DNA of 64,000 bases from Asterias rubens (Eukaryota), in NCBI RefSeq assembly GCF_902459465.1, contig NC_047064.1, forward strand, positions 14,942,001 to 15,006,000, read 5' to 3'. The translations under genes and the position numbers were made by a program. Below are positions 9,877 to 37,400 of this stretch, piece after piece. The stretch's first letter is position 1; every line of letters starts with the position of its first letter. The notes beneath the pieces were generated by a model. It had not been told where the DNA came from, did not search any database, and saw only the letters and a list, made by a program, of their open reading frames with translations.

Positions 9877-12800
9877 AGCTGGGGATAAAACCTTCTTGAA
9901 ATCTGAACAAATCATCTTGCAAATGGAATGTTTTCTTGTGTGTAATTTCCCTTGACAAATTTCCACATGGTTTTCAGGATAAGCAAGCAACAGCTGAATA
10001 CCAGTAACAAGCAATATGCAACAAATGGATACTTGGCGAGTAACCCTGTTTTTATGGTGGAAGAAATTTCATGCTAAGCAGATTGTTGTGCTTAGCAGCT
10101 CTATGAAATTGGGCCACGTACAGCAACCAGACCACCAAATGATAGTTTGCTGTAAAGAGTAGAACATTGACTTGAAATAGTCCATTGTCAATTCAGGAAA
10201 TTAACTATACTCTGATCTATTCAGTTATATAGGACTATAAAGTCAAGTGCTTGTGACTGATTGTTGCCAAGGGGTTATTGTTTCAATCTGTTTTTGGCCA
10301 CATCATCTTTTAAGGTTAAACTACATCACTGGTCTACAGAACAGTAAATTCATTCCAATAGTTTCAAGACTAGTGAAAAAAAAAAAAAATCAGGTTATCC
10401 TGTTTTAGTTTGAAACTAAGTCGTTGCGAGGCCCGGAAGAAGGATGTAATGAAACATTACCGGAGAAAGGGTGCAAGCAATTAATGTGCAAAAGTGTGTT
10501 TCGAGACAACTATAAGCGGAAACATTTAATTGTTTTTTTTTTTCCCTGCCAATATTAATCATTATGGGAAGGTAACATTCTGCATGTGAATGGGCAAACA
10601 TGTCTTTAAGGGTCATTCAAGCAACACACATGTAACATCAATGCCATGTTTTTCTCAGGAGCCATTTTATTGCTTACAGTTTTCTGCTACTGGGACGGAA
10701 AGTACTTTGGGTGCCATAAATCCTTGTACTCATTTTTGGAGCACATAAGAAGTTGTTGAAGGATTTTGTGGACTTTCATATGCATGCTTGTTCTATTTTG
10801 GTGTAATCAAACTAATATGCTGGTAACCTTGGTTGTCTTTAACTGTTTTACCCAAGTCCATGTATGACTGATACGATAAATACAATTTAAAAATTGCATT
10901 TTAAGGGGGGGGGGGGAATTACTAAATATGAAATTTGTCTAATGAAAGGTTCTGTCAGTTAAGAAAATGGAGAAAAGAAAAGCATAATTGTTTTTTGGGG
11001 ATGAAATACTGCAATTAACAATTGTTAACCCTTTTCTGAACACATGGTTAATTTTTGGTGATTATCAGAGAAAGAAATTACAACCTGTTGATTGTTGTCT
11101 ATGTAAATGTTTTGCCACTGAACCATGTGAAATGAAGTTTGTGATTGGTGAAGACACTATAGGCCTGTTTGGGGGGGGGGGGGGTTGGAATGTGAAATTG
11201 TTCTATTCTTTAAACGCTCAGTCTAATTGTTTGGCAAAAAAGAAATATGGAACTCAGCAACTTCATTCCCAAGGATTACCGCATAAGTAAAAGTTTCTTG
11301 GCAATAGCACAGATATCCAAAAAGAAGCTCTTTAATAATCTTGACTCATAGCACTAATAGCAAACTTTTATTTCCAGAGCAAAACGTTTAATGTTCCTGA
11401 TATAATTACCAGAAAAATCCACCCCAGTATCCTGGGGGGGGGGGGGGTACCTGTGATGTGATGCACTTCACAGCTACTCAGGATTCGTGTAAACGTCTCC
11501 TTCCCCACAAAGGGATTGATCCCTTTAAAAATGAGTAATGTAACATTTCCAGACTTCCCTCCCACTTATTATTGTTAGACTCCAGAGCTGATGTCCTTCA
11601 CAACAGCTTTACTTAGCGAGAAAAGAGTCCTCTTTAAAGTGACAGTTTCCTTCAATATTGCTTTAATACATCAAATGTTGTGGCCTTTTCAATATTGAGA
11701 AAATAGATTTAGCTGTTGCAAACTGCTTATAGATGCAAAACATACTAGTTTAGTGGCCCTATGATGGCAGGGTTTTTCTCAAAGGCTAATCTTGGTCTCG
11801 GGAGCTGGCTGTTCCTTTACTGCTGAAGTGCAGTATTCTTGATTCATTTGATTTTGTGCAATTTCAGCCCAATTTCATAGACCATTTCATAGACCTCTGT
11901 GAAATTGGGTCCAGATTGCACCAATTCTGCTTTAGGTAGAAATGATTGCTCAAAATTGATTTGTTAAGCAGAAACTAGCAGAATATTATTTTTTATTTTT
12001 TTAAATGCTAGTCAAAGGTTGTACATGTGGTGTGGCTGGTAACCATATTCTGGTGAGCATAAGTTTGTTGTGCTTAGCTAGGAATAGTTTTTGGTACAAA
12101 GAATGCTTACCCACACTCCTATTAAAATGTATCCCTTTTTTTCTTTAAGATTTTATAAAGCAGAAATTTGTTCCTGTTTTTAATTAACCAAATGTGGCCA
12201 TGACGTGTCACAGCAGACATTAGTTGTGTCTACATGTAGTCACCCAGTTGTTTAGAAGTTTGGGGTTTTTAATTTTCAGTTTGTCTAGTGGACAGGTTTC
12301 CATGTCTATAAGGTTTTTTTGGTCAAATCTATTTAAAAAATGCCAAAGATATTTGTGAGTTGTTTGAAACAAACTTTGGGAATGCGTTTATGTTCGTGTA
12401 TTGTCACAAAATATAACTTTTCAAATTTAGTATTTCATGTTTCACCTCACGCAAAAATGCACTTATGTCCACCCAACGTTTGTATACACCTATGTATGTG
12501 TGATAACTAATAGTAAAGCAACTCTAAGGTTGAAATCATACCGGAACTTCTTAAAGTTTAATTCTATTAAAATGGAAGTTATCTTATGTTTATGAAGATT
12601 AAATACAAGTGTTTTATCCATGACTCATTGGTCAGAAGAAACTGCTACCATAATTCAGTGAATATTAGTGAACAACTGCTCTGGATGACTAAGTATTACC
12701 TCACAACAAGCAAGATATTCTTAACTTTAAAAAAAATGGTTTTACACATTTTAAAAATAAAACAAAATATCAAAATATCACAAAATATGTTTGAAAATAC

Positions 12801-13229
12801 TATGTCAAAGACAGGGAATGAACGTCGTTTTGGCAGTTGAGAATTCTTTTTTTGTTTGTAAGTGTTTATTTATTTATGATTGACTGGCACCATCCATCTA
12901 GTATGGCATATCCTTAATCACACACTAAAGGAAACAAAGTGAGTCACTAATCTATCTGAACACAGTGAACATCTAGAGATAATTGGGAAGAGTGTCTACT
13001 GTGTCAGCCAAAAAAGAAAACATCCATTACACAAAAAAAATGGCGACATAAGCAAGCAGTTCCGAACTGCTGACTTGACAAGGGCATACCGTTCCCCAAG
13101 CCCTGGTTTGGTTGGTAGAACCAGCAGCTAGCCTAGCCTCTACACAAATTGTCTGCTTGCTCAGGCCTTTTTCCTGCCTAGGTGTGTACAGCCAGCTAAA
13201 CTACTACCCATAGGAGTTTTACAGGACTG

Positions 13230-13290
13230 TGATTGGACTAAAGAATGACCCCTATGTCAGCTATCCCATAATAAGAGGAATAAAACCAGC
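13230..13290 (+). promoter_or_regulatory. Probable collagen core promoter
   Basis: Inverted CCAAT (ATTGG 13232-36), CArG-like CCATAATAAG (13266-75) and TATA-like AATAAAA (13279-85), about 110-160 nt upstream of the ATG. There is no upstream ATG between these and 13391. The TSS is not directly observable. Confidence 0.45.
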
Positions 13291-13370
13291 GGTATTTCTG
13301 TGTATCGGAGAGCCCCAGCCGAGGAACTGAACTGAGGCCACATCTCCAGTTTTTAAAACTTTATTGAAGG

Positions 13371-13409
13371 GACTACAGAGATTGTACATCATGTATAGCT
13401 TTGTAGGTC
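13371..13409 (+). promoter_or_regulatory. Collagen 5' stem-loop around the start codon (LARP6-type translational element)
   Basis: CTACAGAG (13373-80) pairs with CTTTGTAG (13399-406). Inside lies ATTGTA-CAT-C-ATG-TATAG, giving the same 6-nt and 5-nt bulge spacing as the human COL1A1 element as I recall it. Confidence 0.75.
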
Positions 13410-13475
13410 TATCCACCCGTTACAGGCGGTTACTCCTGGTCATAGCTGTTCTGTTCACCATAGCCGAGGCCCAAT
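13391..13475 (+). CDS. Exon 1: signal peptide [28 protein letters not shown]
   Basis: ATG at 13391, hydrophobic core and AEA|Q cleavage-like site. Phase-1 donor T|GTAAG at 13476 matches the phase of the VWC exon. It lies within the collagen 5' stem-loop. Confidence 0.9.
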
Positions 13476-16400
13476 GTAAGTCAATTTTATTTTCTATTTT
13501 TTTCCCCCCCAAGTATAAAGTTTCCAAAGAAGTTGTGTTTTTTTTTTTGTATTCTTGATTCAATCTCATGCATGATGGTAAAGTCAACAAGCTTACTTGT
13601 GTGTTTGGAAACAAAAAAACTTTGAGCACAAACAAAACAAAATGTTTATGAAATTTTTTTATCCTGTGTTTTTCACAAAGTTTTTTTAAAATTTTATTGC
13701 ATGCTTTTAAGAATTACTTACAATCTGAATGATGTTTTATCTCAAAGCACTTTTGAAATGCTCTGCATGCCTGCCTCTCTCCCACATACCCCCTAACGAT
13801 CCTTGCCAAAATCGCTAAAAAATATTGTGGTTTATTACTTGATTAAAAATTATTTACGGACCCAAAAAAAAATTCAATTGTGAATGGGTATTTATCATCT
13901 GTAATCGTATATTCTTTTGTACAGTGGGAGAACTTGTGTGGACAAGTTCATTTGTTTTTTAAATAGTCTTTTGTTGTTGTTCTATCATTGGGCTGTACTC
14001 TTCGAAGTTCCAGTTTGAGAAAAATTCCTTCATTGAACAGACCAGTTGAAACAAAAGTCTACTCATCGCAAAGCAAATTATTGTACATATTTCCAGTTCC
14101 AACTGTTTGGTGATACTTTGTTTGAAAAAACATGTTGTTTTATCTATGAATACTTCCATGTCAAGAATTTTGGTTTTGCCGTAAGCGGCTTCTACCGATT
14201 GCAAACCAAACGCAGAATATGTTTTCCATAAATCAAGTCTTCAAAATGATAGAACGTCTGGTGGATATGAGTAACTTTAAGTTGTTGTTGATTGTACCCT
14301 GTTGTCCGTTGTTCTACTAGCTCCAAGGTAGTCCATCATTTATAGCCTCAGTGTGTTAGACTCTGGGAGTGATCAGATAGCAGTGGTTTGAAGTTGGTGA
14401 AAGCAAATCACACGTTGACTCGAGCGATGACATGTAAGGGACACTTGATCAGGAAATGATCATTTAAAGACTAAATCTTGATTCAGGACAGAGCTAATGG
14501 TTCCAAAACAAACACACTTCAAAACTGATAGAAGATCGTTTCCACTATTTTGAATTCTCTGATTGGATTAGATTGTAGCCTTTGTACAAAAGATCGTTGT
14601 AAGAATTGTCTTGAAAAAAATTTGGACTGATAAAAATCCGTTTATTTTATTTCTAATTGGTGAAACTGAAAGGAATCACTTGCTGGTGGTTGAGTTTCAC
14701 ATTTTGCAAACTTGCCTAAAGTTGATCTTGTCTGTTGTAAGAGAAAAACCGTTCAGAGAACAATGCAGATACTTATAAAGATTGTGTTCTATTTCTATCC
14801 ATTTAAGTATTCCATGTTTTACCAGACATATCCCCTCCCCTGAAAACTAACCCTTGTGTGACCATAGCGGTCACAAGCTTGTACTGAAATGCCCTCAGTG
14901 GAAGAAAACAAAAATTATTGGACTGATTCAACCTTTTTTTCCAATGTTTCCCATATTAAGAAAATTAAAATCATTTGGTTCCTGAATAATTTTCACGACA
15001 CTTTTCCTGAAAATAACAGGGCAAAAAATCAACAAGATTAACAATGCCAGGGCGTATGGTGATGATTAAATACATAAATTAATGGTCTTGACAGGACTAC
15101 CTTTTTCTTTCCAGTCTGCTAAAAGCAATTAAACATTTTAAAAGAAACTCCCTAATGAAAAACACTTGCTACATTTACAATTTGTTCAACACCAATTGGA
15201 ACACACTTTGCCAAGTATTGTCTTGTCTCGCCCCTGTTTAATATTCATGAAAGAGAGGGAGGAGTCAAGTTTTTGATTGACATTTGGTTTTTGTGCTTTG
15301 TAAGAAATAACTGCTGGCTCAGCAACTTGGATCAAAAGGCTTTAAAGTTATGTTTCTCTGCAAGCTCAATGAAAAGTTCCTTTGTTCAAATTTCTTTCTT
15401 TTTTACTAGGATTCATATGTAGTGATCTTGTTATTAGTTGTCGTCTTTGTTGAAGATTGTCATGAAGTTGTTGGAAGAGTTTCTATGTGACTTATTTTGT
15501 GTTTTCTTGAGATGTTTATTTGCTGGGTGGGGGTAGGTAGTTTCAACGGAAGGAAAATATTACCAAACCCAGTTTTATGTTGTTGAAGATTGTCTTGAAG
15601 TTGTTGGTAGAGTTACTACCTGTTTTGTGTTTTCTTTGCATGTTTGTTTGCTAGGGGTGGGTGGCTGTGTTGAAGATGGTTTCAGCACATGGACAATTTT
15701 ACAAAAACCTAGATTGTTTTGGGGAACTTTTCAAAGTTGTGTGAGAATATCACTCGGTAAAGGCAGTGTGCCAAGTCTACCCAATTTGAACAGCTAAATC
15801 AGCAACTTTTTGTGAGATTCTTGAATGACCCTGAAGGATCTGGCAGATGCTGAGGTACCCTCTGACCTGACAAGGCTGATATTAGTTCCACTTGCTCTGG
15901 GATCAACCAAAAAGCTAATAACTCCCCTCCAAGATTGATTAGAGCAATTTAAACTTATGTTCCCCCCTAAGGATTGCCCTGCTCTCGTTTTTTGTTGTCT
16001 TTCTTTTGGTGAGCATGTAAGTTTAACAAGGCTTGATCGGGTTTCCAAATGACAAACCGAGCAACCCTGAAATTTGGGCCCCAAAGAAGTCTCCAATTGA
16101 ACTCATTTCTTTGATAACAGTCATGGGACAAATATTTTGAATTATACCCTCCTCTTTTGTCAAGGCTACTGGTATTTCACATCATCTTGAAATATCATCA
16201 AAATGCAGGGAAAACAAAGTAACTTGAAAGATCATTTTTCAAAACTGTTTCCTCGGGGGGACACAAAGACCCAGCGGCCAGCCTGTCAGATTAGTTGAGC
16301 AGGCATAATGGCAAACAGCCATAAAACTTGGGGGAAAGAGTTAACAGAATTGACTTGTGACCTCGGTGAAGCTGGTTTGGGCCAATCAGAAGTTGCCTCG

Positions 16401-19400: not shown

Positions 19401-22400
19401 GGAATCTTGTTTGTGTGAGGATGTGAGTGAGGTTTTGTGTTTTTTAAACAGTTTTATGAACAGTACAGAAAACAATTTATCCACAACTAAAACTTCAATA
19501 GAATAAGTAAAGGTTGATGTAAACTTAAGAAAACAATAAAAGTATGAGACATGACTTTTGCTGACGTTGGGTTTTGACATAAAAACTAAACACAGACCCA
19601 GGTACTCAACCCAGGTGTAGTGCATTTGTTTTTTTTTGTATTTGAAACCTTCGAACATAAGTACATAAACATGTAAAATTGTCCTGGTCAAGACCAAAGT
19701 AAAAAAAAAAAAAAAAAAAGTTTGATGACAAGGAAAGTGGACCCGGAAATGAAAACTTTGAATTTGTGGAATACTAAATGATTAAAGAATATTTAGTTTT
19801 GGTCATGTCACCTTGAAATCTTTTGAAGTTACAACTTGGATTTATACCCATCCATCCATTGATTTAACACGGGAAAAAAATCCCATGATATCGTTGGTGG
19901 GCCTTAAAAATGAGAGGCGGTTTGCTGCGGAAAGTTTAAAAATGTTTGATCGTTCACCCTTGCCAAATAAAATTTAATATTGGCATTGATTGAGTTTAAA
20001 ACACCGATTCAAAACGACTATTGAAAATTGTGATGATTTTGAAACTGGATAGTTCGCGTGCCACATTTTGGTTCCAGTGTTGCCAGGAGCTGAGGAAGAT
20101 GCCTCGTCGTCGTCAACGTCGTACTCAAGCTCGACATACTATGAGAATCATCTTCCGTGTTTTCACTTGAACGAGCTCTACATGCACGGATCTGAGTGGA
20201 AGTATAATGATTGCACAACGTGCTTTTGCGATAATTCCACAACTAGATGTGACATGGAGAGTTGTCCGCGATTACCATGCTCTGAACCTATCAAGCTTGA
20301 GGGTGAATGCTGCCGAAAATGCCCTTTCTGTAAGTAAGCTTTTGAATCAAAGGGGAAATTAATTTACTTCTTGGTGGTTTTATTTAAGAAAAATAAAGAT
20401 TAAATTCTTTTAAATTTAAGGGCCTTTTTAGTTAAAAATTGCATTCTCAAATTACTAAGGAAGTAGTGTTTTTTTAATAACCTATAAACTGTATAACCTT
20501 ATAACCTAAATTTTGTTCAATCAAATGATGCCCATAAGAAATTCCAATGACATTGAAATGGCATTAATCATTTCCGGCCCCTATTTCTTGCTAGATGTAA
20601 TGACAACTGCAGTATGTTTGAATACTTTTGTGAAATCAAATTATGCCGAAAAAGGAAGTCCGACAAAAATGAAAAAGCCACTAATAACTTCCCGCCCTTT
20701 TTTCTTGCTAGATGCAATAATAACTCAACTGTCGCCCTCATTGACGGGGGCCTCAGGATCTGTAGCAGAAGGAGAGGAAAACAGAGTCCAACTTGATCTC
20801 GGCATAAATTTTGTCGATTCACAAGATACCACATCAATAAATGGTAAAAAACTCTGGCAGTTAAGTGTCTGGACCAGTCGAGATAAAAGGGGCGAAGCTG
20901 CGAAGGTTGGTTTTGTTGAGCAAGCCTTCTCGACGGCCCAAGAAAACACACCCTTGCTAAAGAGGAGTCCATTTCGCTTTCGCTATATAAATTACCCGAT
21001 GGACTTGACGGGTGAGAGATGTTCAGATGTTAAGTTCATTTGTGTGAGATTGGCACAGGGGGAGAAGCCAAACCCTGATTTTTTCTTCAGTGCTGAGCCG
21101 GATGATGAAGTGTTGAAGGAGTGTATTGAAGCACCTGCCTGTCATGGTAAGTGTGTACTGTAAAAAAAGTTGTCCGTTTGTCATTTAAAAAAAGTCAAAA
21201 GCAACTATTTGAAGTTTTCTTCATTGTATATTTTGTATGCGGTGACACCATGTGTATAGCTGCTTGCTGGGTAGATTATGTTCTTTTGAGAACTGTCTTG
21301 CTATTTATTCTAATGCTGCAGAATAGATTTCTTTTTGGAATTTGAGAGATTTCTTGGTTCCAAATAGAACTGGTTTAAGTAGATAATGCAAAATGCCGTG
21401 AGCCCTGAACCAAATAAACAATGATATCCTGACCATGAAAAAACTTAAATCCCACAGTTTTCTTCATGTTTTTGATGTTTTCTTCATATCTTCTAAAATG
21501 ATCTGAATAAGAAATGATAATAATGCATTTTTACCTCAATATTTCTGTGGAGGGTGCTGCTGCAACTTACGCCTACAACAATATTTTCTAACTCTTTTGA
21601 TTTCAGGTGTTGTCATAAGGGGTCTGACATGGAGCTACAAAGCAATGACTGTAATTGCTGGTCAGGCAAACCCACTCTTCATCAATGCAGTGGCTCACTT
21701 CACCTCCACCAGTAGTAGTGTGTCCGGGAACAGACTATGGCGTCTTGGTATTTTCGGATCCAAGAATGAAGAGGGGACCGGGGAACGGTTCAACTACGTC
21801 CGACAGACACTGCCAGCAGCAGATGCCAATATGCCGTTGGTGGACGGAAACGATATCAAGTATGCCGATGCTATGGCAGAGTTTGATATCGCAGCAATTG
21901 GCTGCAATGGATTCAATTATGCGTGTATGGAGCTGACGAAAGGGGACAAGCCATCCCCCGATTTCACACATTCGGTTTTGGATGACGAGGACGGTGACAA
22001 TATTCTGACGCTTTGTGAAATGGCGACATGCAGAGCTGGTAAATATAACTTACAAATTGAAATAGTTTCCTGAAATCTTTTTCTAAAACTTTGCCTCAAC
22101 TAGAAATACAACAACTGAAAAGTTAAATAGCTTTCTGCAAATGTTTTCAAAACTTTGCCTTATCTAGAAATACAACAACTAAAAAACTTCTACTATAAAC
22201 AATCAAAAGAAAATAGAGAAAGACTATTCATGTAAATTGACAAGTTTCTTATTCTTGTTTTTGCCCAGTATCGCACATTTTAGATATTGACACTGAGCTT
22301 AAGTATGGGTCGATCCTTGATAGTCGTCCTATCAACCCCTTCAGCATCACCATGGAGATCGATGGTGGAAATGTTGGAGCGGCAGGCGAGGACCTCTGGA

Positions 22401-25400
22401 GAGTCAGTGCCTTCGGCAGCGAATCGCCCGACGGGCTCGGGGAAAAGTTTAACGTCCAGTCCCAAGTCCTGAACGAGGAGCAGCAGGACATAACGTTGGA
22501 ACTTCTTCGACCGATGGATCTCGGTCCCGTCAATTTCAATTTTGACATGACCGATCTGACTTGCAAACAGGTCAAATACATGTGCTTGTCGTTCAGCAAG
22601 CTGGACGAGGCCACCACAGTGTTTTCGTTGCATCCTGTCCCAGACGAAAGCGTTCTCACACAGTGTGAACCGACTCATTGCGAGGGTAGGTAACAAAGTA
22701 GCATTTCAGTAACCTTCTTTAAAAATTGTAAATTAACAACATCAAGTGTGCACTTTTTATCTCTGTTCTGATTGAAACGGCTTTTTATTTGCAGTTTGTA
22801 TGTAAGTGTTTAATGTAAAAAAGGATTTTAAAATCACTTGATGAAGGTATGGTGGTCCCATATCTCTGAATTGAAAATTTGTGCATAGATTGCAAATTTT
22901 TATCTAGAATATGCATTTTATTTAGTTTGTGTTTTAAACATTCAAGTTTTTATATGAGTTTCTTAGAAATGTGAATTTAAGATTGTGATGGTCTTTCTTT
23001 TTCTTGTTACTTTCTTCTTCTGTAGCTGTTTATGCTCGTCAGTTAGCCTGGGACTACGAGTCCGAGGAGATCACTCTAGGAATGAAAACTCCACTCGTGT
23101 TGAGTAGCACAGTCCACTTCACACCAACGGGTGAGAATGTCACAGGCACGGACCTGTGGAAACTCACACTCTTCGGAGGGAAAAACAAACGGGGGACAGG
23201 GGACAGATTTACTCCCACCGAACAGCTCCTCGATGCCTCCCAATCTGCTACACCCTATTATTCGGGGTCAACCCTACAATTCGACGGCATCTCGACCAGG
23301 TTTGAACTGGGGGCGTTGGGATGTGCCGAGTATGACTTCTTCTGTATGGAGTTCTCACAGGCTGAGAATTCTCAACCTGAGTTTCATTTGCTGTACGAGA
23401 CGAACACGACATCTTTAGTTCATTGCAAGAGAATGGAATGCTCATCAGGTGAGTGCTTTAATGGCTTCAATATTGGTGTACTTAGTCGTTTTTGATTGAG
23501 GAAATCAGCCGGTAAATAAACACAGGAAGAGGATGCTTGACTTACTGTCGCCAATTGTTACGAGCCTTAATTAAAATCAAACTTCAAGAGAATAACAAGT
23601 TTTTCAGACACAGTTTTTAGAAAACACTAGGAAACGACGTCATTACTTATTCAAACCAAGGTTATAAAATTGAAAGGGTGTGGTTAAATTAGCATTGATA
23701 AGCCTTTGGAAGACTCTGCTTGGGTCGAAACGTCAAGCCATTGTCTATCTTTAGCCTGAAAATAATATATGCGGACATGTCTCTAACCTTTTAGTTTGAA
23801 TTGCCTCTATTCTAGATTCTAATTTCGCAAATGAAACTATTTTTCGATCGAGCAGGTTTCAGAAATTTGATAAAAGGTCTTTAAAATATGTTTCTTTGGA
23901 TTCGTCTTGCAGTGTTGTCAGCGGAAAACTTCCAAGCCCAACTCGTGAAGGGCTCCATTGTCGATGGCCGCCGCAGCAACAGGCTACAGCTCAGAGCCTC
24001 AGTTGACAGTACCGATTCTGGCATTGAGGGCGACGATCTCTGGAAGATGAAGGCTTACGGCAGCACAAACTCTGATGGGAGTGGGGTGAGGTACAACGAG
24101 TTGGACCAGGTGCTGACCAATCTTCAGCAAGACACGGGCGTGGCAGCTCATGATACCCTGAACTTTGTTCCTATCGGTCTGAATTTTGATATGGAGGAAC
24201 TCGGCTGCAGCGAGGTGAAGTACATCTGCCTGGAGTTGCAAAGGGACCCCAGCTCATCTGTGATTTTCTCTCTGGAGTCTGAAGGCGGGCTAACGAGGTG
24301 CATGGAGTTGAGATGCGAAGGTGAGTTGTTTCATCAAAACCAGAAATTTAGTTTATTTCAATCGGAAATTCCTAAGCATTCAAGGAGCATGCAGTTGTGG
24401 TTAATTAAATGTAAATCTTAAAAAGTTTGAAAAATGCTCACTCTTAATGAACAAATAAATCAATTGTGGTTCATCTTCTTTTTGTATTTGAACTAAATCT
24501 AAACAATCGTAGGGTATTTTCTTTTCTTACATTTACAATTTTTAAACCCTGAAGAAAGGCACTCTAAAACTTTGAATTGGTGGGCAAAAGAAGATGTACA
24601 AAAATGTCCACATTATATTTATTGAGAAAATAGAATGAGCTGTTGCAAACTGTTTATCAACAAAAAGCACCTGTGGTATAAACGCAAATAATTGGTATGG
24701 CCTGATGGTTCAACCCTAGCAGAATCTGTCTCGAAAATATATTTATTTAAACATGTTTTTGTTTTGTCATTTAGGTGTTTATGCTAAGAGTGTTACCTGG
24801 GACTATCAACCAGGGAGTATTACCCTAGGCCAAGACAGTCCTCTGGTAGTCAACGCAATGGTAGAAATGGCCAACATGGGTAGCCCGATCTCCGGATCCA
24901 GCCTCTGGCAACTCGGCCTATTTGGCAGCAAGTCCCCAACAGGCGAAGGTCGACGCTTCAACGCCAAGAGACAGATTCTGAGTCGGAGTCAGGAAAGATT
25001 GGATTACGCCAAACTGGGCACCACGCTAGATTTCAGCAATACGGGCACCATCTTTGATATCGGAGCAATCGGCTGTACAGAGTATACCCACATCTGTGTT
25101 GAGTTTGAGCAGTCTCAGACGCCGAGGCCCGACTTTTATTTCTTCACCGAGGATGGCTCCTCATCTCTGGTTCAATGTCAAGAGAGATCCTGCAACTCAA
25201 GTAAGATTTAGGAACATCTGTTCTCTTTCCTCCTAGAAAATAATTGTTATCAAATTTTGTTGGTATTATCAAAGGTATTGAAAAGTGTGTATTTTTAGAA
25301 AAAGGACTTGGTCTAGTCTTTGATTTTGAAATGGTAAATCAAAGGACTAGGTCTAGTCTTTGATTTTAAAGAATCAATTACTTTCAGTGATCACACAAGA

Positions 25401-28400
25401 CATAAACTACATAGCAAGACACTAATATCTTTCCAATCGTAACTGTTTTCTTTTGCAGATGTTGCTGTGAAGCCTTTAACCACCAACTTGCGAAGAGGGT
25501 CGATCGTTGATAATCGTCCGATAAACCCGATACGGTTGGATCCAATGATAAGCAGTGTCGATCTGGGTGTGGCTGGAACAGACCTGTGGCAGCTATCGGC
25601 CTATGGAAGTAATAACGACGATGGAGCAGGCACTCGCTACGCTGAGCAATCTCAAATCCTCAACCAGAGACAAACCAATAAGATGCTTCCCCCCGATGGG
25701 GACGAACTTGATTTTGGGCCCATCGACATGAACTTTGACATGACAGGACTTGGCTGTGCTGATGTTAGATTTATCTGCACAACATTGAGTCGAGATCCGA
25801 GGGCGAGTGTTGAGTTTACGCTAGAGCCCCAGCCAGATCAGTCTGCACTGACCAGCTGTCAGCCCTTAGTCTGTGAAGGTAAGCCACATCATTTTGTAAT
25901 AATTTTGTTGTTGTAAAAAAATATGATTTCTTTTGTAATCATGTAGAGTCTTTGTGAGATGGATGTGAAGTTTTATAAGTGAAAGGTATTCTGATCAGTG
26001 CTCTACAATTTCTCCTCTAGGTATTTATGCTGAAAAGCTTGAGTGGACACTTGATACCGCAGAGGTTGTCCTGGGTCAAAAGAGTCCGGTCATCATCCAT
26101 GCAAACGTGACAATGGCCGACTTGGGATCAGACATATCTGGCCAGAAACTTTGGAAGGCCAGTCTCTTTGGCAGTAAAGACCCAAACGGTGAGGGTGATC
26201 GATTCAGCGAGAGTGAACAGATCCTAAACCAAGAAGGTATCAGTCAATCTGCCCAACGAGGATTAACGATGGTCCTTCCGGACAGTTCCACTCTGTTTAA
26301 TGTTGGAGCCATTGGGTGCACTAACTGGAGATACGCCTGTTTAGAATTTGGACAGATCAACAGCCCAAAGCCTCCATTCCACTTTTTCACAGTCGGTGGT
26401 GAGCCAACACTGATCAAATGCCAAGAAAGACCCTGCTCTTCAGGTAAGATAATTTGTAGATTAATTTTTAAGGAGATATTCATTGTTTTCAAACACTAAT
26501 ATGGGACAATTTGACAAATTATTAACATTTGGTTCTTCTTCATCTTCTGCCAGGAATAGATGTTCTTTAGTCACTGACTCAATCTTTGGTTATTAAATTA
26601 ATTTGTGCAGTTTTTTTTTCGTAGTCTTCAAGCGCTACCACTACCTTTTTAGTGTTATCTATCAGACTTACATGGCTATTCTTATTCTGTTCATTTTCCC
26701 TTTAGCTCTAAAACTTAATCCACTGCAAACCTCTATTACATCTGGCTCCGTTGTTGATGGCAGACCGCAAAATCGAATTCAAATGCAAGTGTCAACAGAT
26801 GGTAGTGATGTTGGTGTCGACGGAAACCGTCTGTGGGAACTAGCAGCCTTTGGTAGCAGCAACCCTGATGGATCGGGGACAAAGTACCTTGAGAAACGCC
26901 AGGTTCTTACCCCAGCTCAGGGCGACACTCCTTTGAATCCTGGAGAGCTCCTGGATTTCGAAGTTGTGGACTTTGATCTTGACATGAGAGACAACGGATG
27001 CGGGGAGGTTCAGTATGTATGTGTGGAACTCAGGAAAAATCCGAGAGCATCTGTGGACTTTGTCATCGAGCCTGTACCTGATGAAAGTGCTCTGACAAGT
27101 TGTCAGCCAGTCAAATGTGATGGTAAGTACACTCAACTCTAGCTATAAAGAAGTTCTGCGTGTAAAGAATACTCTTATCTCATTTCTGCTTTTGTGGTTT
27201 TGTGTTTTGTGTTCTCAGGGGAACAAAAGCTCTGGACTCAAATTCATAAAGACTCTTAGCACAAAAAAATCCTTAGCACAAGAAAAATTTCCTTGGCAAA
27301 AATGTTTACCATCCAGAATACAGTTACCATTATAGTCTTTTATACTCGAGTCTTTTCTTGCTTAACTAAGAATTTTTTTGAAGCAGAATATTCAGCTGAA
27401 CAGCTTGATGAAAGTTGGAAGTAGCGATGCTGACATATTACAGCTTGGTCAGTTGATTTTTCTGGCATACTTCATAATACTCATACCCATGTTGTTTGTT
27501 TTGTAGGAGTGTTCTTCAAGTCACTTGAATGGTTGTATGAACATGACACCATCATGCTTGGTGAGGAGACGGACATGACCGTCTTTGCCATCGTTGAGAG
27601 CAAAGAAGCCACCAGAGATGTTGAGGGGGAGGGTCTCTGGCAGTTGAATCTCTTTGCAAGTCGCAGTGACGACGGCGTCGGTGAACGTAACCGCTTACAG
27701 AGACGTATTCTCAAAGAACCAACAGCTAGCCAGCCTCTTGCCGGTGGGACCCCCCTGAATCTCCTCGATGTCAAGGCATCGTTTGATTTGGGTGCGATAG
27801 GATGCGGTGACTATGGGTATCTCTGCCTGGAGTTTGAGAGGGGCCAACGTCCAGAACCAACATTTTACATGTTCACTGAGGCTGGGACAGAAACACTTGT
27901 CAGCTGCAAGCAACGAACATGCCAATCAGGTGAATAAAAAAATTAATTAACATAATTCTTTAAAATACTCCTTTTTTCAGGAGACATCCACATTAGTTTG
28001 AGAATTTATGAACCCCCAAAACTTGCATATCACGGTTTCTCAATTGAATTATACTTATTAGAAATCTTTCTTCTTTCTGAACAGCCATTGGTATATCAGG
28101 CATGGAGTCATCACCTATCTCGGGAGATGTTGTCGAGGGTAGACCAGTAAATCCGTTGATTTTCAACCTCTCGGCCATCCCCGCTCCAGACACATCAGGC
28201 CTCAGTGGCACAAACCTTTGGCAAGTGAGCGTCTTTGGCAGCGACAGCCCAATCGGCGAGGGCCCAGAACTGAATCCCCAGCAGCAAGTTCTCACTGGGG
28301 ATCAGCTTGATTTGGACCTGGAACCAGGAAGCCCCATTGATTTCGGAGCTGTAGGCGTCAGCTATAACATGTTAGGCATTGACTGCGCTTCAATGGGTTA

Positions 28401-31400
28401 TATCTGCGCTAGACTCAGTAAGAACCCTGCTGCGAGTATTGACTACACATTGGAAGGGTCACCAGATGAGAGCGTGTTGGTGGATTGTCAACCAGTGGAT
28501 TGTAGAGGTAAGAAGCTTGAACACAAAGTTCTTATAATTATGTTCAGTTCTTTATGACTTCTGTTTGGAGAGCTTATTTCAACCTGTTAATTGTTATGAA
28601 GCTGTTGCCCAAAAAAATATGCTCTCATAATTGTACCTTTGTTTCTGAAGCAATTGAGCAATTCCATTTGTGTTCCACTCACAGGTGTTTTGGCCGAGGC
28701 AATGAGCTGGGAGTACACTGAAAGAAACACTGTGATCAACCAACCCAGTCCGTTGACAATTGACGCCATTATCTTCACAAACGATAGCCGGCAGTTGTCT
28801 GGTTCTGATCTGTGGCGCTTGGGTCTTTACGGGAGTAGAAACAATAACGGCACAGGCCCACGTCTCAACTACACTGAGCAGATACTGAACGCAAGAGCAG
28901 CTTCAACATCTCTACCCAGCGGGTACCCGTTGTCTCTACGGAGTGTGCAGACTGAGTTTGATATCGGTTCACTTGGATGCTCAGAATTCACCCACATTTG
29001 TGCAGAGTTCACCCAGGGGGAGAATCCATCCCCAGAATTCAAGTTTGAAATTTCTCGGGGAAGGGACGTTATAACTGAATGCATTGAAGTGGAATGTGCC
29101 GCAGGTAAGAACAGACAAAATCCATTCAGTTTGAAATCAAATCTTTGGATAGAATCCATGAATTACCCCTATCAAATTGAGCTTTCAGTAACTCTTTTTT
29201 TTTGTATTCACTCCTACAGATGTCATATTGTCTGGGCTTTCTGCTACAATGTCCGACAACAACGTTGTTGAAGGTTCCGGTAACCTGTTCAGACTTCTTG
29301 TCCGAGCCACGCCTGCCCAAGACTCAAAAGGTGTTGCTGGTACCGGATTGTGGCAGCTTGATTCATATGTCACCCCTGATCCGACATCAGATATCAAGCT
29401 GGCGCCACAGACTCAGATCCTATTAAAACCACAACAAGATCTTATCCTCAGACAAAGATCAATCCTAGACTTTGGGAGCGTCGATTACAAACACGATTTG
29501 ACATCAGTACAGTGCAATGAGATGGGCTATCTATGTGTTGAACTCAGCAAAGGACCCTCACCGAGTGCTACGTTTGATCTGCTAACCGTACCTGAGGGAA
29601 GCATCTTAAAAGCTTGCAATCATTTGGAGTGTAAAGGTGTGAGGGCTAACAGTATTGACTGGTCCTACGAAGCAACCAACGTGGTTCCTGGCGAACAGAC
29701 TCCATTCTCTATTCAAGCCAGTGTCTCAATGGCTGATGGCACGCGGGAACTAAGCGGAGACGGCTTATGGAGGCTTGGTCTCTTCGGAAGTCGGAGTCCA
29801 GATGGGATCGGAGAGAGGCACGACTTCGTTCATCAAACCCTCAACGACGATAAAGCAAGTCAAATGATCGAGTCTGGTAAAAATCTTGGCTTGGCTGACA
29901 TCAATACACAGTTTGATGCTGGTGCTCTGGGATGCACTGACTTCAAGTACGTATGTGTAGAGTTTGCAAAAGGTGACAATGCAGAGCCCGATTTCAGCTT
30001 CACAGTTGCAAATAAAAGAAGTGAATATGCAGAGGAGAAGATAGTTTCCTGCAAACCAGCTCCTTGTGAAGCAAGTAAGTTCTACTTCATTTATTTTATC
30101 AAAAAAAAAGACAAATTTCATACATGTACCCTCTTATAAGCATGATATTATTAAACTAGAAATAGAAGTATTAAATGTAATATTTTATGGGTTTGCTCTT
30201 TCTTTCTCTCTCTCAAAAGGAGCTGAGTTTATCAACTTGAATGCAAATCTCATGGACACCAATCCAATCCTAGAGGATCATCGAGACAATGAGGTCTCCC
30301 TTTCCACTGTAGCTCTAGCTGGTCTCGACAGCAGCTCAGTCATGGGAGAGAACCTCTGGAAACTCAAATCTTACCTCTCCCCTAACCAAGACGGTAGAGG
30401 CAGGAAGTACGCAGCCACCGAGCAAATCTTATCCCCTACCCAGCAGAATGACCCGCTGAAGCCGGCTGGCTCTCTGATCTGGGATGACATGAGCGTGCCG
30501 CTTGACATGTCCGACTTAACTTGTTCCAAGACGCCGTATCTTTGCGTGACTCTGGAGAAGAACACGGACCCTTCAATGGAATTTACAATGCATGGAGTTC
30601 CAAATAATGGTATACTGACTGATTGCGTCGACATCACAAGTAGATGTGAAGGTATGCTGTTCAATTCCATCCATCTTTAATAAAACGTTTAAATAATTAT
30701 ACACTATTGAGAAGAATCCTGCTGTTTACGATAAACGACAACAAAATTGTTACTTTTTATCTTGCACAATTTTTTTTTCTTCTTTTGGACTTGAATAGAG
30801 TATACAAAATATTTATTGCAAGATAATAAAGTGGCTCATATTGCTTCATTCTTTCTGAAAGTTTGAAGGGTTCACTGCACTTCAGCCAACCTCATTAATG
30901 CATTGCACACAACAAGCTCCCACATCATTGTCCAATTAACCATGATGTCATCATTGTTTTTCCTAACACCAGGGGTGGTTGCCACGGGCATTGAATGGAG
31001 CCATGAAGCCAACAACTTCATGGCTGGACAGCCAGCTACTTTGAGCCTCAATGTCGCCATCCCAACCACAGAGGAGAGTCGTGACGTTGACGGCCTGGGG
31101 CTGTGGCGACTTGGCCTCTTTGGCAGTAGACAGGCGGATGGAGGGGGCCAACGATTGGGAAATGTCGACCAGATTTTGAACTCTTACCACCAGGCAAACG
31201 GCCTCAGCGGTGGGAACCCCCTGCAGCTCAGAGATATAACAACTCGATTTGATCTAAGTCAGATTGGGTGCACCGACTATCAATATCTGTGTGTGGAGTT
31301 TGACAAGGGGCAATCGGCTCAACCTGATTTTGCTTATAGAGTGTCGACGGGGGAGAACACGCTGGTTTCCTGCAAGCCACAACCATGTCGAGGTACTTTA

Positions 31401-34400: not shown

Positions 34401-37400
34401 AAGCCAGAGTCTTGGTTAGCATTCTGTTTGACCCTTTTGGATATGTTTTCCCTCCAATATTAACTAGTTCTTTCTATTTTCTTTTTGTTCTCTCCTTCTT
34501 GTGTTGTTACCTGATCGCCTGGATCCTTCTGCCAACAGCTGCCAATAAAATTGTAAGCAATCACTTTCCCTTCTTTTATTGATTTAGCTCTGATACATTT
34601 TAGTGTTTTCCCCATAACTGTCAATATTCTATGCAAACAAGCATTTCTTCACTTCTATAAAATGTTGACTTTTAAAACTGATTTCTTTAACACTCTGACA
34701 ATGATGTTTAGTACATTCTGTTTAGTCGTGGTCTTATCGAAATCATGAATTTTTGATACTACTTTCAAATCCTATTATTTATCGGGATTTTTGTTTTGTT
34801 GTGGCAGTTTGGCGCCAAGGGTGACCGAGGACCAAAAGGAGAGCCTGGAGAGGCCTTCGGAGGCGGTGGCAGCGGGGTGAGTATTTGAGAAGGAGATAAT
34901 TTTTGGAGTAAATCGTTTTTATAAACTGTGTCCAGAATGTTGTTAAAGACTTGTAAAACGATAACCATGTTTTTAAAATAATTTGTTAATGTGTCTTTTC
35001 TTCTCACCTTCATTTACAGTTTGTACCAAGAGCTGGGCCACCAGGAAACCCAGGACCCCCAGGACCATCTGTAAGTATTTATGAGTTTGCATTTTTTGTT
35101 AAAGTATTTTTAATCATTCTTGTTCTGCTTCTTTATTTTTCACATCATTATTGTGTTTGTTTTGTAATCAACTTTGTTTCCCCCCCCCGTGTTTCTCCTT
35201 CTCCATGATAGGGATCTCGTGGTGAGATTGGTGATTCAGGACCATCCGGACCCTATGGACAGAAGGTGAGAATATAAAAATTACAAAAACCTTTTGATTG
35301 GTTTAGAGCACGCCACATGATATGTCTTAGTTTTACTGAAAAGCCGCAGGAGTGTGACATGCCATATCTGAATCAAACAGTTTACTATACCCTTGGCAAC
35401 CAATACATTATACCGATAGCTACTAGTGTACTATATCAATAGCAAATGGTGTATATTTATAGAACACTCCTAGGATCACCTCGTTGTTTTAACCATAGCA
35501 CTGAAAGCATTCAATATTTGTATACTGTCATATTGCCGACCTCTCTATCAATTCAACCTTGTAAAAAATATTTCTTGTTCATCTAAAAAAAAAATCATGT
35601 TTTTCATCCTTTCAGGGAAATGCTGGATCTCGTGGATTGAATGGACTTCCCGGTCAACCTGGACGCGCTGGACCACCAGGACCCCCAGGAACCGTATGTA
35701 CTATTATACATATCCAGTAGTGAATGTTGCAAACTAAACCATTTTTGTTGCTGCTCTCTAAGTTTTGTCTTGAAGTTATACAAAAACGATATCTCATCAG
35801 AAAAGAAATGGTGCATGCACTGAATCCGTTTCAACTGAGAAAGCTGCATTTCCTTTACTTTGATTGTTCTGATTTTATCTGCTTTATGAAGTTTATATAA
35901 AGATGCATTCTGTATAGTGAAAAGTTGATGATGTTATATGAATCATCATATTTTTCACACACACAAAATAATTGTTGGCTTGTTTTTATTTTTGGCGATA
36001 AAAAACACATGATGGTTTTCAACACAAAAGACTGCATGCTTTTTTGTATAATGCCTTTTATTTTAAAGTTTAATTTATGTTCAATTGTTTTTTTTTTTTT
36101 AATCCTTCCCTCCCCATCACAGATTGCCCAGAGTGCCAACATTGGACAACAATCTTACAAGGGAGTCCTCCCAGGAGCCTACCAGTACCCACAAGCCTCC
36201 GTTCAAGTAAGTTCTGGTTATTTCAAAAATCTTCCTTCTTGGAACATTTTTTCGCTCTCCTTGCCCCTCCCCCAACCACATACCTTTGTTAGCAAAAGCA
36301 AAAGCAATGTTCATATTTAAGACTTTCTTCTCTCTGGAACTCCTCTCTGGAAGGAAAACAGTTACAGGCATGTGATTTCTCAGGATTTTTGTTCCTGTTA
36401 TCAAAGTTCTTAAAGCCATGAGCCTTCAAGTTTTCTAAAGAAATCGCTTAAAGCCATTATACACTTTCGGAACAGAAAAAAAAAGTTCACAGATTTACAA
36501 ATTATTTACAGGGTTTACAGAAGGTAATGGTAAAAGACTTCTCTTGAAATATTATTCCATGAAATGCTTTACTTTTATTAAAACAATTATCAATTCTCGA
36601 CATCGAGAATTACTGATTTATAGTAAACACATGTCATGACACAGCGAAACAGGCAGAAACAAGGGTGGGTTTTCCCGTTATTTTCTCCCGACTCCGATGA
36701 CCGATTGAGCCTAAATTTTCACAGGTTTGTTATTTTATATGTAAGTTGTGATACACGAAGTGTGGGCCTTGGACAATACTGTTTACCGAAAGTGTCCACT
36801 GGCTTTAAGAAAGAGGTTCACATTGTATGTAAACCTGTAGTTTTGTACTTCTGTTGATGCATACTTTCTGTTAATTTCCAACATGTTAATATCCCCGCAT
36901 GATATTCTTCCTACTAATGTCTTGTTACCACATTACTACAAAGTAAAATGATTCTCAAAATGCTTTATACTATCGAAAGCTGCTATACTTCTTACCAAGT
37001 AATATTTTATTGCCATTAATGAAAAGTGATTACCAAACAAGTCCCTTCGTTTGTATTCATTTTTTAATATATTGCTGTTTTGACGTTTTTGTTTACAGGG
37101 ACCCCCAGGACCACGTGGTCTTCCAGGTAGCGCAGGAAACCGAGTAAGTTGATGTTAAAACAAATCATAAGGTTTTTAATTCTCGATTCAATAACTATCA
37201 TTTTGTGTGTTGATGATATGTGTTTGGGAAAACATTTGTTGACCATGATTTTTTTAATTTGCATTCTAGGGAGCACAAGGTTTGATGGGACCTGCTGGAC
37301 CTACTGGTGAGCCCGGACCCTCTGTAAGTTGACTCCCCAAGTTGATTATATTTTGAGCAAGTCTCTAGTGTATCTTAAATAAAATACAACTTGATGGAAG

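What the first reader, a model, noticed from the sequence alone, without database searches (positions are those of the whole stretch)
13371..13409. Collagen 5' stem-loop with a truncated upper stem and no upstream AUG
Seen: GACUACAGAG-AUUGUA-CAU-C-AUG-UAUAG-CUUUGUAG-GUC forms an 8-bp lower stem (two more pairs beyond a bulged G) and can form a short upper hairpin GUACA/UGUAU over the start codon. Known (recalled): human COL1A1 reads CCACAAAG-AGUCUA-CAUGUCUAG-GGU-CUAGACAUG-UUCAG-CUUUGUGG and binds LARP6. The lower stem, both bulge lengths and the flanking A..UA|CAU and AUG|U..AG are conserved. The upper stem, including the vertebrate upstream AUG, is collapsed. Inference: LARP6-type translational control of collagen exists in this invertebrate in a minimal form. 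A similar element may already be noted for sea urchin.
Basis: partly seen in the sequence, partly recalled or inferred. Interest (0 to 1): 0.72.

Follow-up and report, generated by a model that had tools for sequence, protein, structure and literature searches.

The report
Echinoderm collagen start-codon RNA hairpin
A small RNA hairpin around the start codon of an echinoderm fibrillar-collagen mRNA is real, transcribed and shared by several collagen genes; it looks like the invertebrate counterpart of the collagen 5' stem-loop that the LARP6 papers read here call vertebrate-only, but whether LARP6 binds it is untested.

Summary
Bases 13373-13406 fold into a hairpin around the AUG at 13391 (-14.7 kcal/mol, z -3.55). 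Only 0.3-0.7% of 39-nt windows in this 64 kb fold as well. RNA reads start at 13321-13327, so the whole hairpin lies in the mRNA. Exon 1 ends at 13475.

A pattern scan of metagenome contigs recovered four more collagen 5' ends: an ortholog, a paralog from the same assembly, and two others. All share one architecture: an 8-bp lower stem, one bulged A, a 6-8 bp upper stem and a variable loop. All 76 pair cells are standard pairs, with one compensatory C-G/U-A swap. The flanking UTR and signal-peptide sequence are at random-level identity.

The untranslated arm matches the human COL1A1 5' stem-loop at 13 of 17 positions (p about 0.001). Homology to the vertebrate element is therefore likely.

The segments that form the vertebrate 9-nt internal loop, which human LARP6 needs, are predicted to be paired here (P at least 0.97). 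One of the five critical loop bases differs. LARP6-type control is plausible but unproven.

Verdict: a new variant of a known element. An earlier report in unsearchable sea-urchin cDNA papers of the 1990s cannot be excluded.

The parts
13321..13475 (+). Exon 1 of the fibrillar collagen gene: 70-nt 5' UTR plus 28 signal-peptide codons and one further base
   Evidence: RNA depth is confined to about 13321-13475. Read starts with adapter before them lie at 13321, 13326 and 13327. Contigs start at 13327-13359. Loose ends at 13475 continue into the next exon.
13373..13380 (+). 5' arm of the lower stem (CUACAGAG), untranslated
   Evidence: Pairs with 13399-13406. It is 6 of 8 identical to the human arm. 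Position 2 co-varies with its partner in the related loci.
13381..13381 (+). Single bulged A, at the position of the first base of the vertebrate B1 loop strand
   Evidence: Unpaired in every fold of the five sequences and invariant.
13382..13388 (+). 5' arm of the upper stem (UUGUACA), untranslated; the first four bases align with vertebrate B1
   Evidence: Pair probability is at least 0.97 for the four B1:B2 pairs. UUGU is invariant in all five sequences and was not fixed by the search pattern.
13389..13391 (+). Apical loop UCA; its last base is the A of the start codon
   Evidence: Loop length and sequence vary among the five sequences (3-8 nt).
13391..13393 (+). Start codon
   Evidence: First AUG of the mRNA. 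It opens MYSFVG plus a hydrophobic signal peptide.
13392..13398 (+). 3' arm of the upper stem (UGUAUAG): the UG of the AUG, the Tyr codon and the first two bases of the Ser codon; the last four bases align with vertebrate B2
   Evidence: UAU and AGC are invariant at synonymous sites in all five sequences.
13399..13406 (+). 3' arm of the lower stem (CUUUGUAG), codons 3-6
   Evidence: The last two bases were not fixed by the search pattern, yet they always complement the 5' arm.
13476..13481 (+). Splice donor GTAAGT of intron 1
34539..34552 (+). 14-nt micro-exon joined to exon 1 in the dominant mRNA; the next exon starts at 34808
   Evidence: The 30-nt loose-end consensus maps as 34539-34552 plus 34808 onward.
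13162..13285 (+). Conserved proximal promoter motifs (T-rich palindrome 13162-13178, inverted CCAAT 13231-13236, TATA-like block 13265-13285)
   Evidence: Nearly identical in L010. The same three motifs occur in the same order in genomic L007.

Best explanation
This is the echinoderm form of the fibrillar-collagen 5' stem-loop: a cis-acting mRNA hairpin, about 50 nt from the cap, that holds the start codon at its tip. It is shared by the mRNAs of several fibrillar-collagen genes. Shown: the hairpin is transcribed, strand-specific and under selection as a structure. Its untranslated arm resembles the human COL1A1 element far more than chance allows. Inferred: at about -15 kcal/mol and this far from the cap it is too weak to stop scanning ribosomes on its own. 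It most likely serves as a docking site for a protein that gates or coordinates translation of partner collagen chains, as LARP6 does in vertebrates. The LARP6 ortholog is the leading candidate (my estimate about 0.4). It would have to read a bulged A next to a wobble-rich four-pair helix rather than an open 5+4 loop. My odds: real selected RNA structure about 0.9; common ancestry with the vertebrate element about 0.75.
For: Fold and statistics. Transcription, 5' end and splice donor. Four further collagen 5' ends carry the same architecture, including two different genes from one assembly (L008 and L010). All 76 of 76 pair cells are standard pairs; there is one compensatory swap and two one-sided A-U/G-U changes, and indels fall only in the loop. 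Among non-orthologous pairs the upstream UTR is 26-32% identical and the downstream CDS 29-44%, against 73-100% and 94-100% for the two arms. UUGU[A/G]C and the last two bases of the 3' arm were not part of the search pattern, yet they are conserved or complementary. Tyr, Ser and Phe codons are invariant at synonymous sites. The human 17-mer matches the UTR at 13 of 17 positions exactly at the hairpin, with 18 of 20000 shuffles as good. Four of the five bases critical for human LARP6 are present at the aligned positions (PMC4615758).
Against: No binding data exist. Continuous hairpins do not bind the human La domain (PMC12288881). The critical B2 C is a U. PMC4615758 calls the RRM loop 3 needed for binding a unique feature of vertebrate LARP6. 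The comparative set is small: five sequences from about three gene lineages. It is also ascertained with a pattern that fixed most of both lower-stem arms, so the shuffle control for covariation is weak (55 of 500). The organisms of L007 and L009 are unknown. According to the abstract listed (PMC7055395, not read here), zebrafish larp6a/larp6b zygotic mutants are viable and fertile with no defect in muscle structure, so even the vertebrate system may be dispensable.
Confidence: 0.55

Rival explanations
1. A protein-independent structural element. The hairpin itself tunes initiation, by slowing scanning at the AUG or fixing start-site choice in a weak context, with no dedicated binding protein.
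For: The AUG sits at the tip of a stable, nearly continuous helix. The contexts before the AUG differ and are not strong Kozak matches. No open loop is predicted for a protein to read.
Against: Strict conservation of the bulged A and of the exact UUGU/AUAG bases, including two G-U wobbles that a purely thermodynamic element could replace by any pair, points to sequence-specific recognition. From general knowledge of scanning, about -15 kcal/mol placed 50 nt from the cap should inhibit little.
Confidence: 0.2
2. A docking site for a protein other than LARP6, for example a helicase, an ER-targeting factor or an echinoderm-specific RNA-binding protein. The resemblance to the vertebrate element would then reflect shared ancestry of the RNA but not of the reader.
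For: The determinants of human LARP6 binding are only partly present. The plant and green-alga LARP6 La modules tested in PMC11988235 bind the human element about a hundred-fold more weakly than human LARP6.
Confidence: 0.2
3. Convergence. The hairpin arose independently in echinoderms around a signal-peptide start that happens to read M-Y/F-S-F-V, and it is not homologous to the vertebrate stem-loop.
For: No intermediate taxa were sampled. The apical half and the loop region differ in structure.
Against: The match is at the same position in the same gene family. It uses the same codons (AGC, UUU, GUR) and covers 13 of 17 untranslated bases. M-x-S-F-V has no known protein-level reason to recur.
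Confidence: 0.15
4. A DNA-level element: a palindromic factor-binding site just downstream of the promoter, with no role as RNA.
For: The whole proximal promoter and UTR are unusually conserved between the window and L010.
Against: Three of the 15 pairs are G-U, which are mismatches in DNA and on the antisense strand. Antisense folds reach -5 to -10 against -15 to -18 kcal/mol for the sense strand. The reverse strand scores 12-18 bits against 62-69 bits with the covariance model. The spacing between the arms varies by up to 7 nt. The compensatory change preserves pairing, not sequence.
Confidence: 0.04

Closest known systems
Vertebrate collagen 5' stem-loop (5'SL) of COL1A1, COL1A2 and COL3A1 mRNAs, the binding site of LARP6
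   Same: It spans the UTR/CDS junction of fibrillar-collagen mRNAs and encloses the start codon. It has an 8-bp lower stem of nearly the same sequence, followed by an unpaired A, then four bases facing four bases, then a stem closed by ACAU/AUGU. The codons AGC-UUU-GUR are the same. It is shared by several collagen chain genes.
   Different: It is 34-41 nt long instead of 46-48 nt. There is no 10-bp apical stem and no upstream AUG in it. The four-by-four segment is paired (U-G, U-A, G-U, U-A) instead of forming the open loop. The second codon is Tyr UAU rather than Phe UUC, which replaces the critical B2 C. It lies about 50 nt from the cap rather than 75-85 nt. Binding by LARP6 is untested.
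Sea-urchin COLP1alpha gene (1-alpha fibrillar collagen of Strongylocentrotus purpuratus, reviewed in PMC2852846)
   Same: The gene layout matches: a tiny first exon, an intron of about 21-23 kb that can encode one VWC and many SURF modules, and a dominant short mRNA whose N-propeptide is reduced to the minor helix.
   Different: That review does not mention a 5' hairpin.
Iron-responsive element in ferritin 5' UTRs (analogy of mechanism only)
   Same: It is a short bulged hairpin in a 5' UTR whose exact unpaired bases are read by a protein that controls initiation.
   Different: There is no sequence or structural match: no Rfam family matched at E up to 10. The IRE is cap-proximal and does not contain the start codon.

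Membership tests
Vertebrate collagen 5'SL / LARP6 site | Lies at the 5' UTR/CDS junction of a fibrillar collagen mRNA and includes the start codon | tested here: met
   Exon 1 and the transcript 5' end were mapped by reads. The triple-helix and COLFI exons lie downstream. The orthologous full ORF in L010 has Collagen and COLFI domains.
Vertebrate collagen 5'SL / LARP6 site | 8-bp lower stem of the CCACAAAG/CUUUGUGG type | tested here: met
   CUACAGAG/CUUUGUAG, with pair probabilities of 0.92-1.0. The C-G to U-A change is compensatory relative to human and to L007-L009.
Vertebrate collagen 5'SL / LARP6 site | Central internal loop of 9 unpaired nucleotides (5+4) between two stems, essential for La-domain binding (PMC12288881) | tested here: not met
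   By thermodynamic prediction only. The aligned bases pair with P of at least 0.97 in all five sequences, against at most 0.08 in human. The open form costs 5.6-5.9 kcal/mol more. Only the A stays unpaired. Not probed experimentally.
Vertebrate collagen 5'SL / LARP6 site | Five loop bases critical for LARP6: one A and one U in B1; C, A and G in B2 (PMC4615758) | tested here: inconclusive
   By alignment, A, both candidate U positions, A and G are present. The C is a U in all five sequences. The effect of that change on an echinoderm LARP6 is unknown.
Vertebrate collagen 5'SL / LARP6 site | Upper stem of about 10 bp carrying an upstream AUG | tested here: not met
   Beyond the four B1:B2 pairs the upper stem has only 2-4 pairs. 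There is no upstream AUG in the window's UTR.
Vertebrate collagen 5'SL / LARP6 site | Present on the mRNAs of several collagen chains that are made together | tested here: met
   It is found on at least three distinct genes. C-propeptides of L009 and L010 are 37% identical. L008 and L010 come from one assembly. Co-assembly of these chains was not tested.
Vertebrate collagen 5'SL / LARP6 site | Nanomolar, sequence-specific binding by the LARP6 La module | not testable with these tools
   Needs EMSA, ITC or CLIP.
Any curated Rfam family | Covariance-model match | tested here: not met
   No match over the hairpin at E up to 10 in 12800-14000. No Rfam family matched the hairpin, so this says nothing about 5'SL membership.

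The most novel reading that the evidence does not exclude
The coupling of LARP6 to fibrillar-collagen mRNAs predates vertebrates. The echinoderm hairpin would be close to the ancestral ligand: a helix with a bulged A and tandem G-U wobbles. The vertebrate open loop would have evolved from it by four substitutions that turned pairs into mismatches, together with the Tyr-to-Phe change at codon 2. That would overturn the statement in PMC4615758 that the 5'SL arose with vertebrate type I collagen. It would also give structural biologists a natural closed-loop variant with which to dissect recognition.
Probability: 0.3. Interest if true: 0.75.

Novelty: new variant of a known kind. Interest (0 to 1): 0.6.

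Why it matters
The LARP6 papers read here state that the collagen 5' stem-loop was acquired by vertebrate type I collagen mRNAs and occurs in no other mRNA (PMC4615758, PMC4813270). The LARP6/5'SL pair is also being pursued as an antifibrotic drug target. An echinoderm counterpart on several collagen mRNAs would move the origin of this control element back to at least the common ancestor of echinoderms and vertebrates. It would offer tractable embryos for testing what the element does. It would also provide a natural experiment on recognition: the same scaffold and bulged A, but with the loop zipped up. If LARP6 does not bind, the element still marks an unstudied translational control of invertebrate collagens.

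Tried and rejected
- **Rfam:** a scan at E up to 10 found nothing over the hairpin.
- **Protein routes to other species' 5' ends:**
  - The C-propeptide exon searched against 1.8 billion representatives returned almost only short fragments.
  - The exon-1 ORF had no word-sharing candidates.
  - The full L009 protein was swamped by Gly-X-Y words.
  - Its C-propeptide region gave one fish hit.
  - None of the 270 stored proteins starts with M-x-S-F-V.
  - The cause is that the collection's gene caller reads collagen helices in wrong frames.
- **Exact-product look-ups:** they failed for L009, L010 and a window ORF. For P0002 and P0108 they gave only 3' contigs. P0001 led to transcript contigs of the L010 species.
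- **Other DNA collections:** the echinoderm-type pattern found nothing in prokaryotic genome contigs or viral contigs.
- **Non-collagen pattern hits:** eleven of the fifteen metagenome hits are not collagen 5' ends (for example an ORF of at least 310 aa opening MFSFVMLMIGG in L001/L006). They lack the complementary 3' end and score at most 12 bits with the model.
- **Old papers:** the sea-urchin cDNA papers (JBC 1992, PNAS 1989), the 1999 stem-loop paper and two LARP family surveys are not held.
- **LARP6 in echinoderms:** searches for LARP6 together with sea urchin found nothing relevant.
- **Organism of L009:** the ESM Atlas did not reveal it.

Full report
**1. What is there**

The quoted sequence is at 13371-13409. 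As RNA it folds into four parts:
- an 8-bp lower stem, 13373-13380 with 13399-13406;
- a single bulged A at 13381;
- a 7-bp upper stem, 13382-13388 with 13392-13398;
- the loop UCA, whose last base is the A of the AUG at 13391.

The energy is -14.7 kcal/mol, z -3.55, with 1 of 200 shuffles as good. Over both strands of the window, 0.7% of 39-nt windows fold as well, and 0.3% of GC-matched ones. The hairpin persists in a 181-nt context, where the centroid fold adds three basal pairs beyond a bulged G. Three pairs are G-U, so the antisense strand folds to only -5.2 kcal/mol. No Rfam family matches.

**2. It is in the mRNA, at the true start of a fibrillar collagen**

Contigs of three RNA runs and 1671 raw reads of a closely related species cover only about 13321-13475. 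Adapter-flanked read starts lie at 13321, 13326 and 13327, and the bins before 13305 hold no depth. Every run continues from 13475 into the same next sequence.
- That sequence maps to a 14-nt micro-exon at 34539-34552 and then to 34808, the start of the minor helix.
- Gly-X-Y exons run from 34.8 to 54 kb, followed by C-propeptide exons.
- The 70-nt UTR has no upstream AUG.
- The related species differs at 13356, 13435 and 13450, and at no position inside the hairpin.

The layout matches that described for sea-urchin COLP1alpha (PMC2852846): a tiny first exon, a 21-kb intron holding a VWC exon and the SURF arm, and a dominant short isoform. Earlier notes of this scan call the genome Asterias rubens. 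I could not check that.

**3. Related sequences**

Protein routes failed (see 'tried and rejected'). I therefore scanned metagenome contigs with a pattern built from the window and the human element. It fixed nine bases of the 5' arm (two of them degenerate), then a gap of 3-33, then the AUG and eleven following bases (two of them degenerate). Of 15 loci, four are collagen 5' ends:
- **L010** is the ortholog. It has a 1417-aa ORF with Collagen and COLFI domains, its exons are about 93% identical, and its upstream 1.27 kb aligns at 80%.
- **L008** comes from the same assembly. It has a different signal peptide and a VWC domain.
- **L009** is a full 1414-aa fibrillar collagen whose C-propeptide is only 37% identical to that of L010.
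- **L007** is a genomic first exon with the same intron phase.

All four fold like the window: 8 bp, a bulged A, 6-8 bp, and a loop of 5-8 nt (3 nt in the window), at -14 to -19 kcal/mol. RNAalifold finds the same consensus structure on its own.

**4. Selection on the structure**

On alignment A2, all 76 of 76 cells form standard pairs. The second pair of the lower stem is C-G in three sequences and U-A in two. Two other pairs switch between A-U and G-U. All length changes fall in the loop.

Among non-orthologous pairs the identities are:

| Region | Identity |
|---|---|
| Upstream UTR | 26-32% |
| 5' arm | 73-100% |
| Loop | 0-43% |
| 3' arm | 94-100% |
| Following signal-peptide codons | 29-44% |

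Tyr UAU, Ser AGC and Phe UUU never vary at synonymous sites.

The main caveat is ascertainment: the pattern fixed most of both lower-stem arms, so their conservation among the hits is partly by construction. Three things were not fixed by the pattern:
- the six bases UUGU[A/G]C after the bulged A;
- the last two bases of the 3' arm, which always complement the 5' arm in the collagen hits and never fully in the eleven non-collagen hits;
- the fact that the hits are collagen starts at all.

The set is small, and the shuffle control for covariation is unimpressive (55 of 500). A covariance model built from the five sequences finds no other copy in the window. It gives the non-collagen hits at most 12 bits and the reverse strand 12-18 bits, against 62-69 bits for the sense strand.

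**5. Comparison with the vertebrate element**

The 48-nt human COL1A1 ligand is printed in PMC11988235, and its 3' half is also a common qPCR primer.

Aligned from the 5' end, the elements agree as follows:

| Segment | Match to human |
|---|---|
| 5' arm | 6 of 8 |
| B1 (AUUGU versus AGUCU) | 3 of 5 |
| ACAU and AUGU closing the upper stem | identical |
| B2 (AUAG versus UCAG) | 2 of 4 |
| 3' arm | 7 of 8 |

The human apical 14 nt, with its upstream AUG, have no counterpart. The best ungapped match of the human untranslated 17-mer in the 70-nt UTR is 13 of 17, exactly at the hairpin. Only 18 of 20000 shuffles reach that score.

Both elements share one geometry: an 8-bp stem, an unpaired A, and four bases facing four. 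In human the four positions are G/G, U/A, C/C and U/U, which RNAfold leaves open (pair probability at most 0.08). In the five echinoderm-type sequences they are U-G, U-A, G-U and U-A, paired with P of at least 0.97. Opening them costs 5.6-5.9 kcal/mol. The Phe-to-Tyr difference at codon 2 is part of this switch.

**6. What this means for LARP6**

PMC4615758 reports that five loop bases are each required for binding: an A and a U in B1, and C, A and G in B2. Four of these are present here; the C is a U. PMC12288881 shows that hairpins without the internal loop do not bind the human La domain. It also shows that the loop becomes ordered and partly base-paired when bound. PMC4615758 adds that RRM loop 3, needed for binding, is a unique feature of vertebrate LARP6. 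Plant and algal LARP6 La modules bind the human element only at micromolar affinity.

Homology of the RNA element is therefore well supported, while recognition by an echinoderm LARP6 remains open. From general knowledge of scanning, a hairpin of -15 kcal/mol about 50 nt from the cap should not block initiation by itself. The invariance of the bulged A and of the wobble pairs suggests a sequence-specific reader. I therefore favour a protein-docking role shared by collagen chain mRNAs, with LARP6 the first candidate.

**7. Novelty**

The LARP6 papers I could read say the element was acquired by vertebrate type I collagen mRNAs and occurs in no other mRNA. Full-text searches combining LARP6, stem-loop, invertebrates, sea urchin and collagen found no report of an echinoderm element. 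A review of fibrillar collagens by the sea-urchin collagen group does not mention one. The original sea-urchin cDNA papers of 1989-1992 are not in the library, so an early remark there cannot be excluded. I rate this a new variant of a known kind.

Noticed in passing
window 13475 / 34539-34552 / 34808: In all four runs the dominant mRNA joins exon 1 to a 14-nt micro-exon and then to the minor-helix exon. It skips the VWC exon (about 20053-20334) and the whole SURF arm (20712-33991), so the long N-propeptide isoform is the minor one in these samples.
   Followed up: partly
window 13162-13285; L010 about 950-1100; L007 1690-1790 (minus strand): The proximal promoter is almost identical between the window and L010. 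It shares three ordered motifs with the unrelated-looking gene in L007: a T-rich palindrome (CAGGCC-T5-CCTGCC), an inverted CCAAT box (GATTGG, about -90) and a CCCATAATAAG...ATAAAA block. From memory, vertebrate type I collagen promoters also carry an inverted CCAAT box and a TATA box at similar distances.
   Followed up: partly
L010 (= L021, JACSEG010000475.1) 1-1273 and about 1150-1200: This contig joins 1.17 kb of promoter-like DNA to fully spliced cDNA, so it looks like an assembly of mixed DNA and RNA. It carries an upstream AUG 31 nt before the hairpin, and that short reading frame stops at the UAG inside the 3' arm. The apical loop has four extra bases relative to the window.
   Followed up: partly
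L008 348-3746 (minus strand): This ORF starts with the same hairpin and MYSFVG, continues into a VWC domain and about 1000 residues with no Pfam match (possibly SURF-type modules), and reaches a stop codon after 1133 aa with no triple helix. It may be a truncated isoform, a retained intron or a fibrosurfin-like gene that shares the collagen 5' end.
   Followed up: no
L016-L025 gene tables: The gene caller behind the large protein collections splits collagen mRNAs and reads the Gly-X-Y region in wrong frames (for example 251-, 777- and 127-aa products on one 1417-aa ORF). Collagen relatives from transcriptome assemblies are therefore largely invisible to protein searches.
   Followed up: partly
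earlier notes on this genome: Earlier notes disagree on the organism.
   Followed up: no
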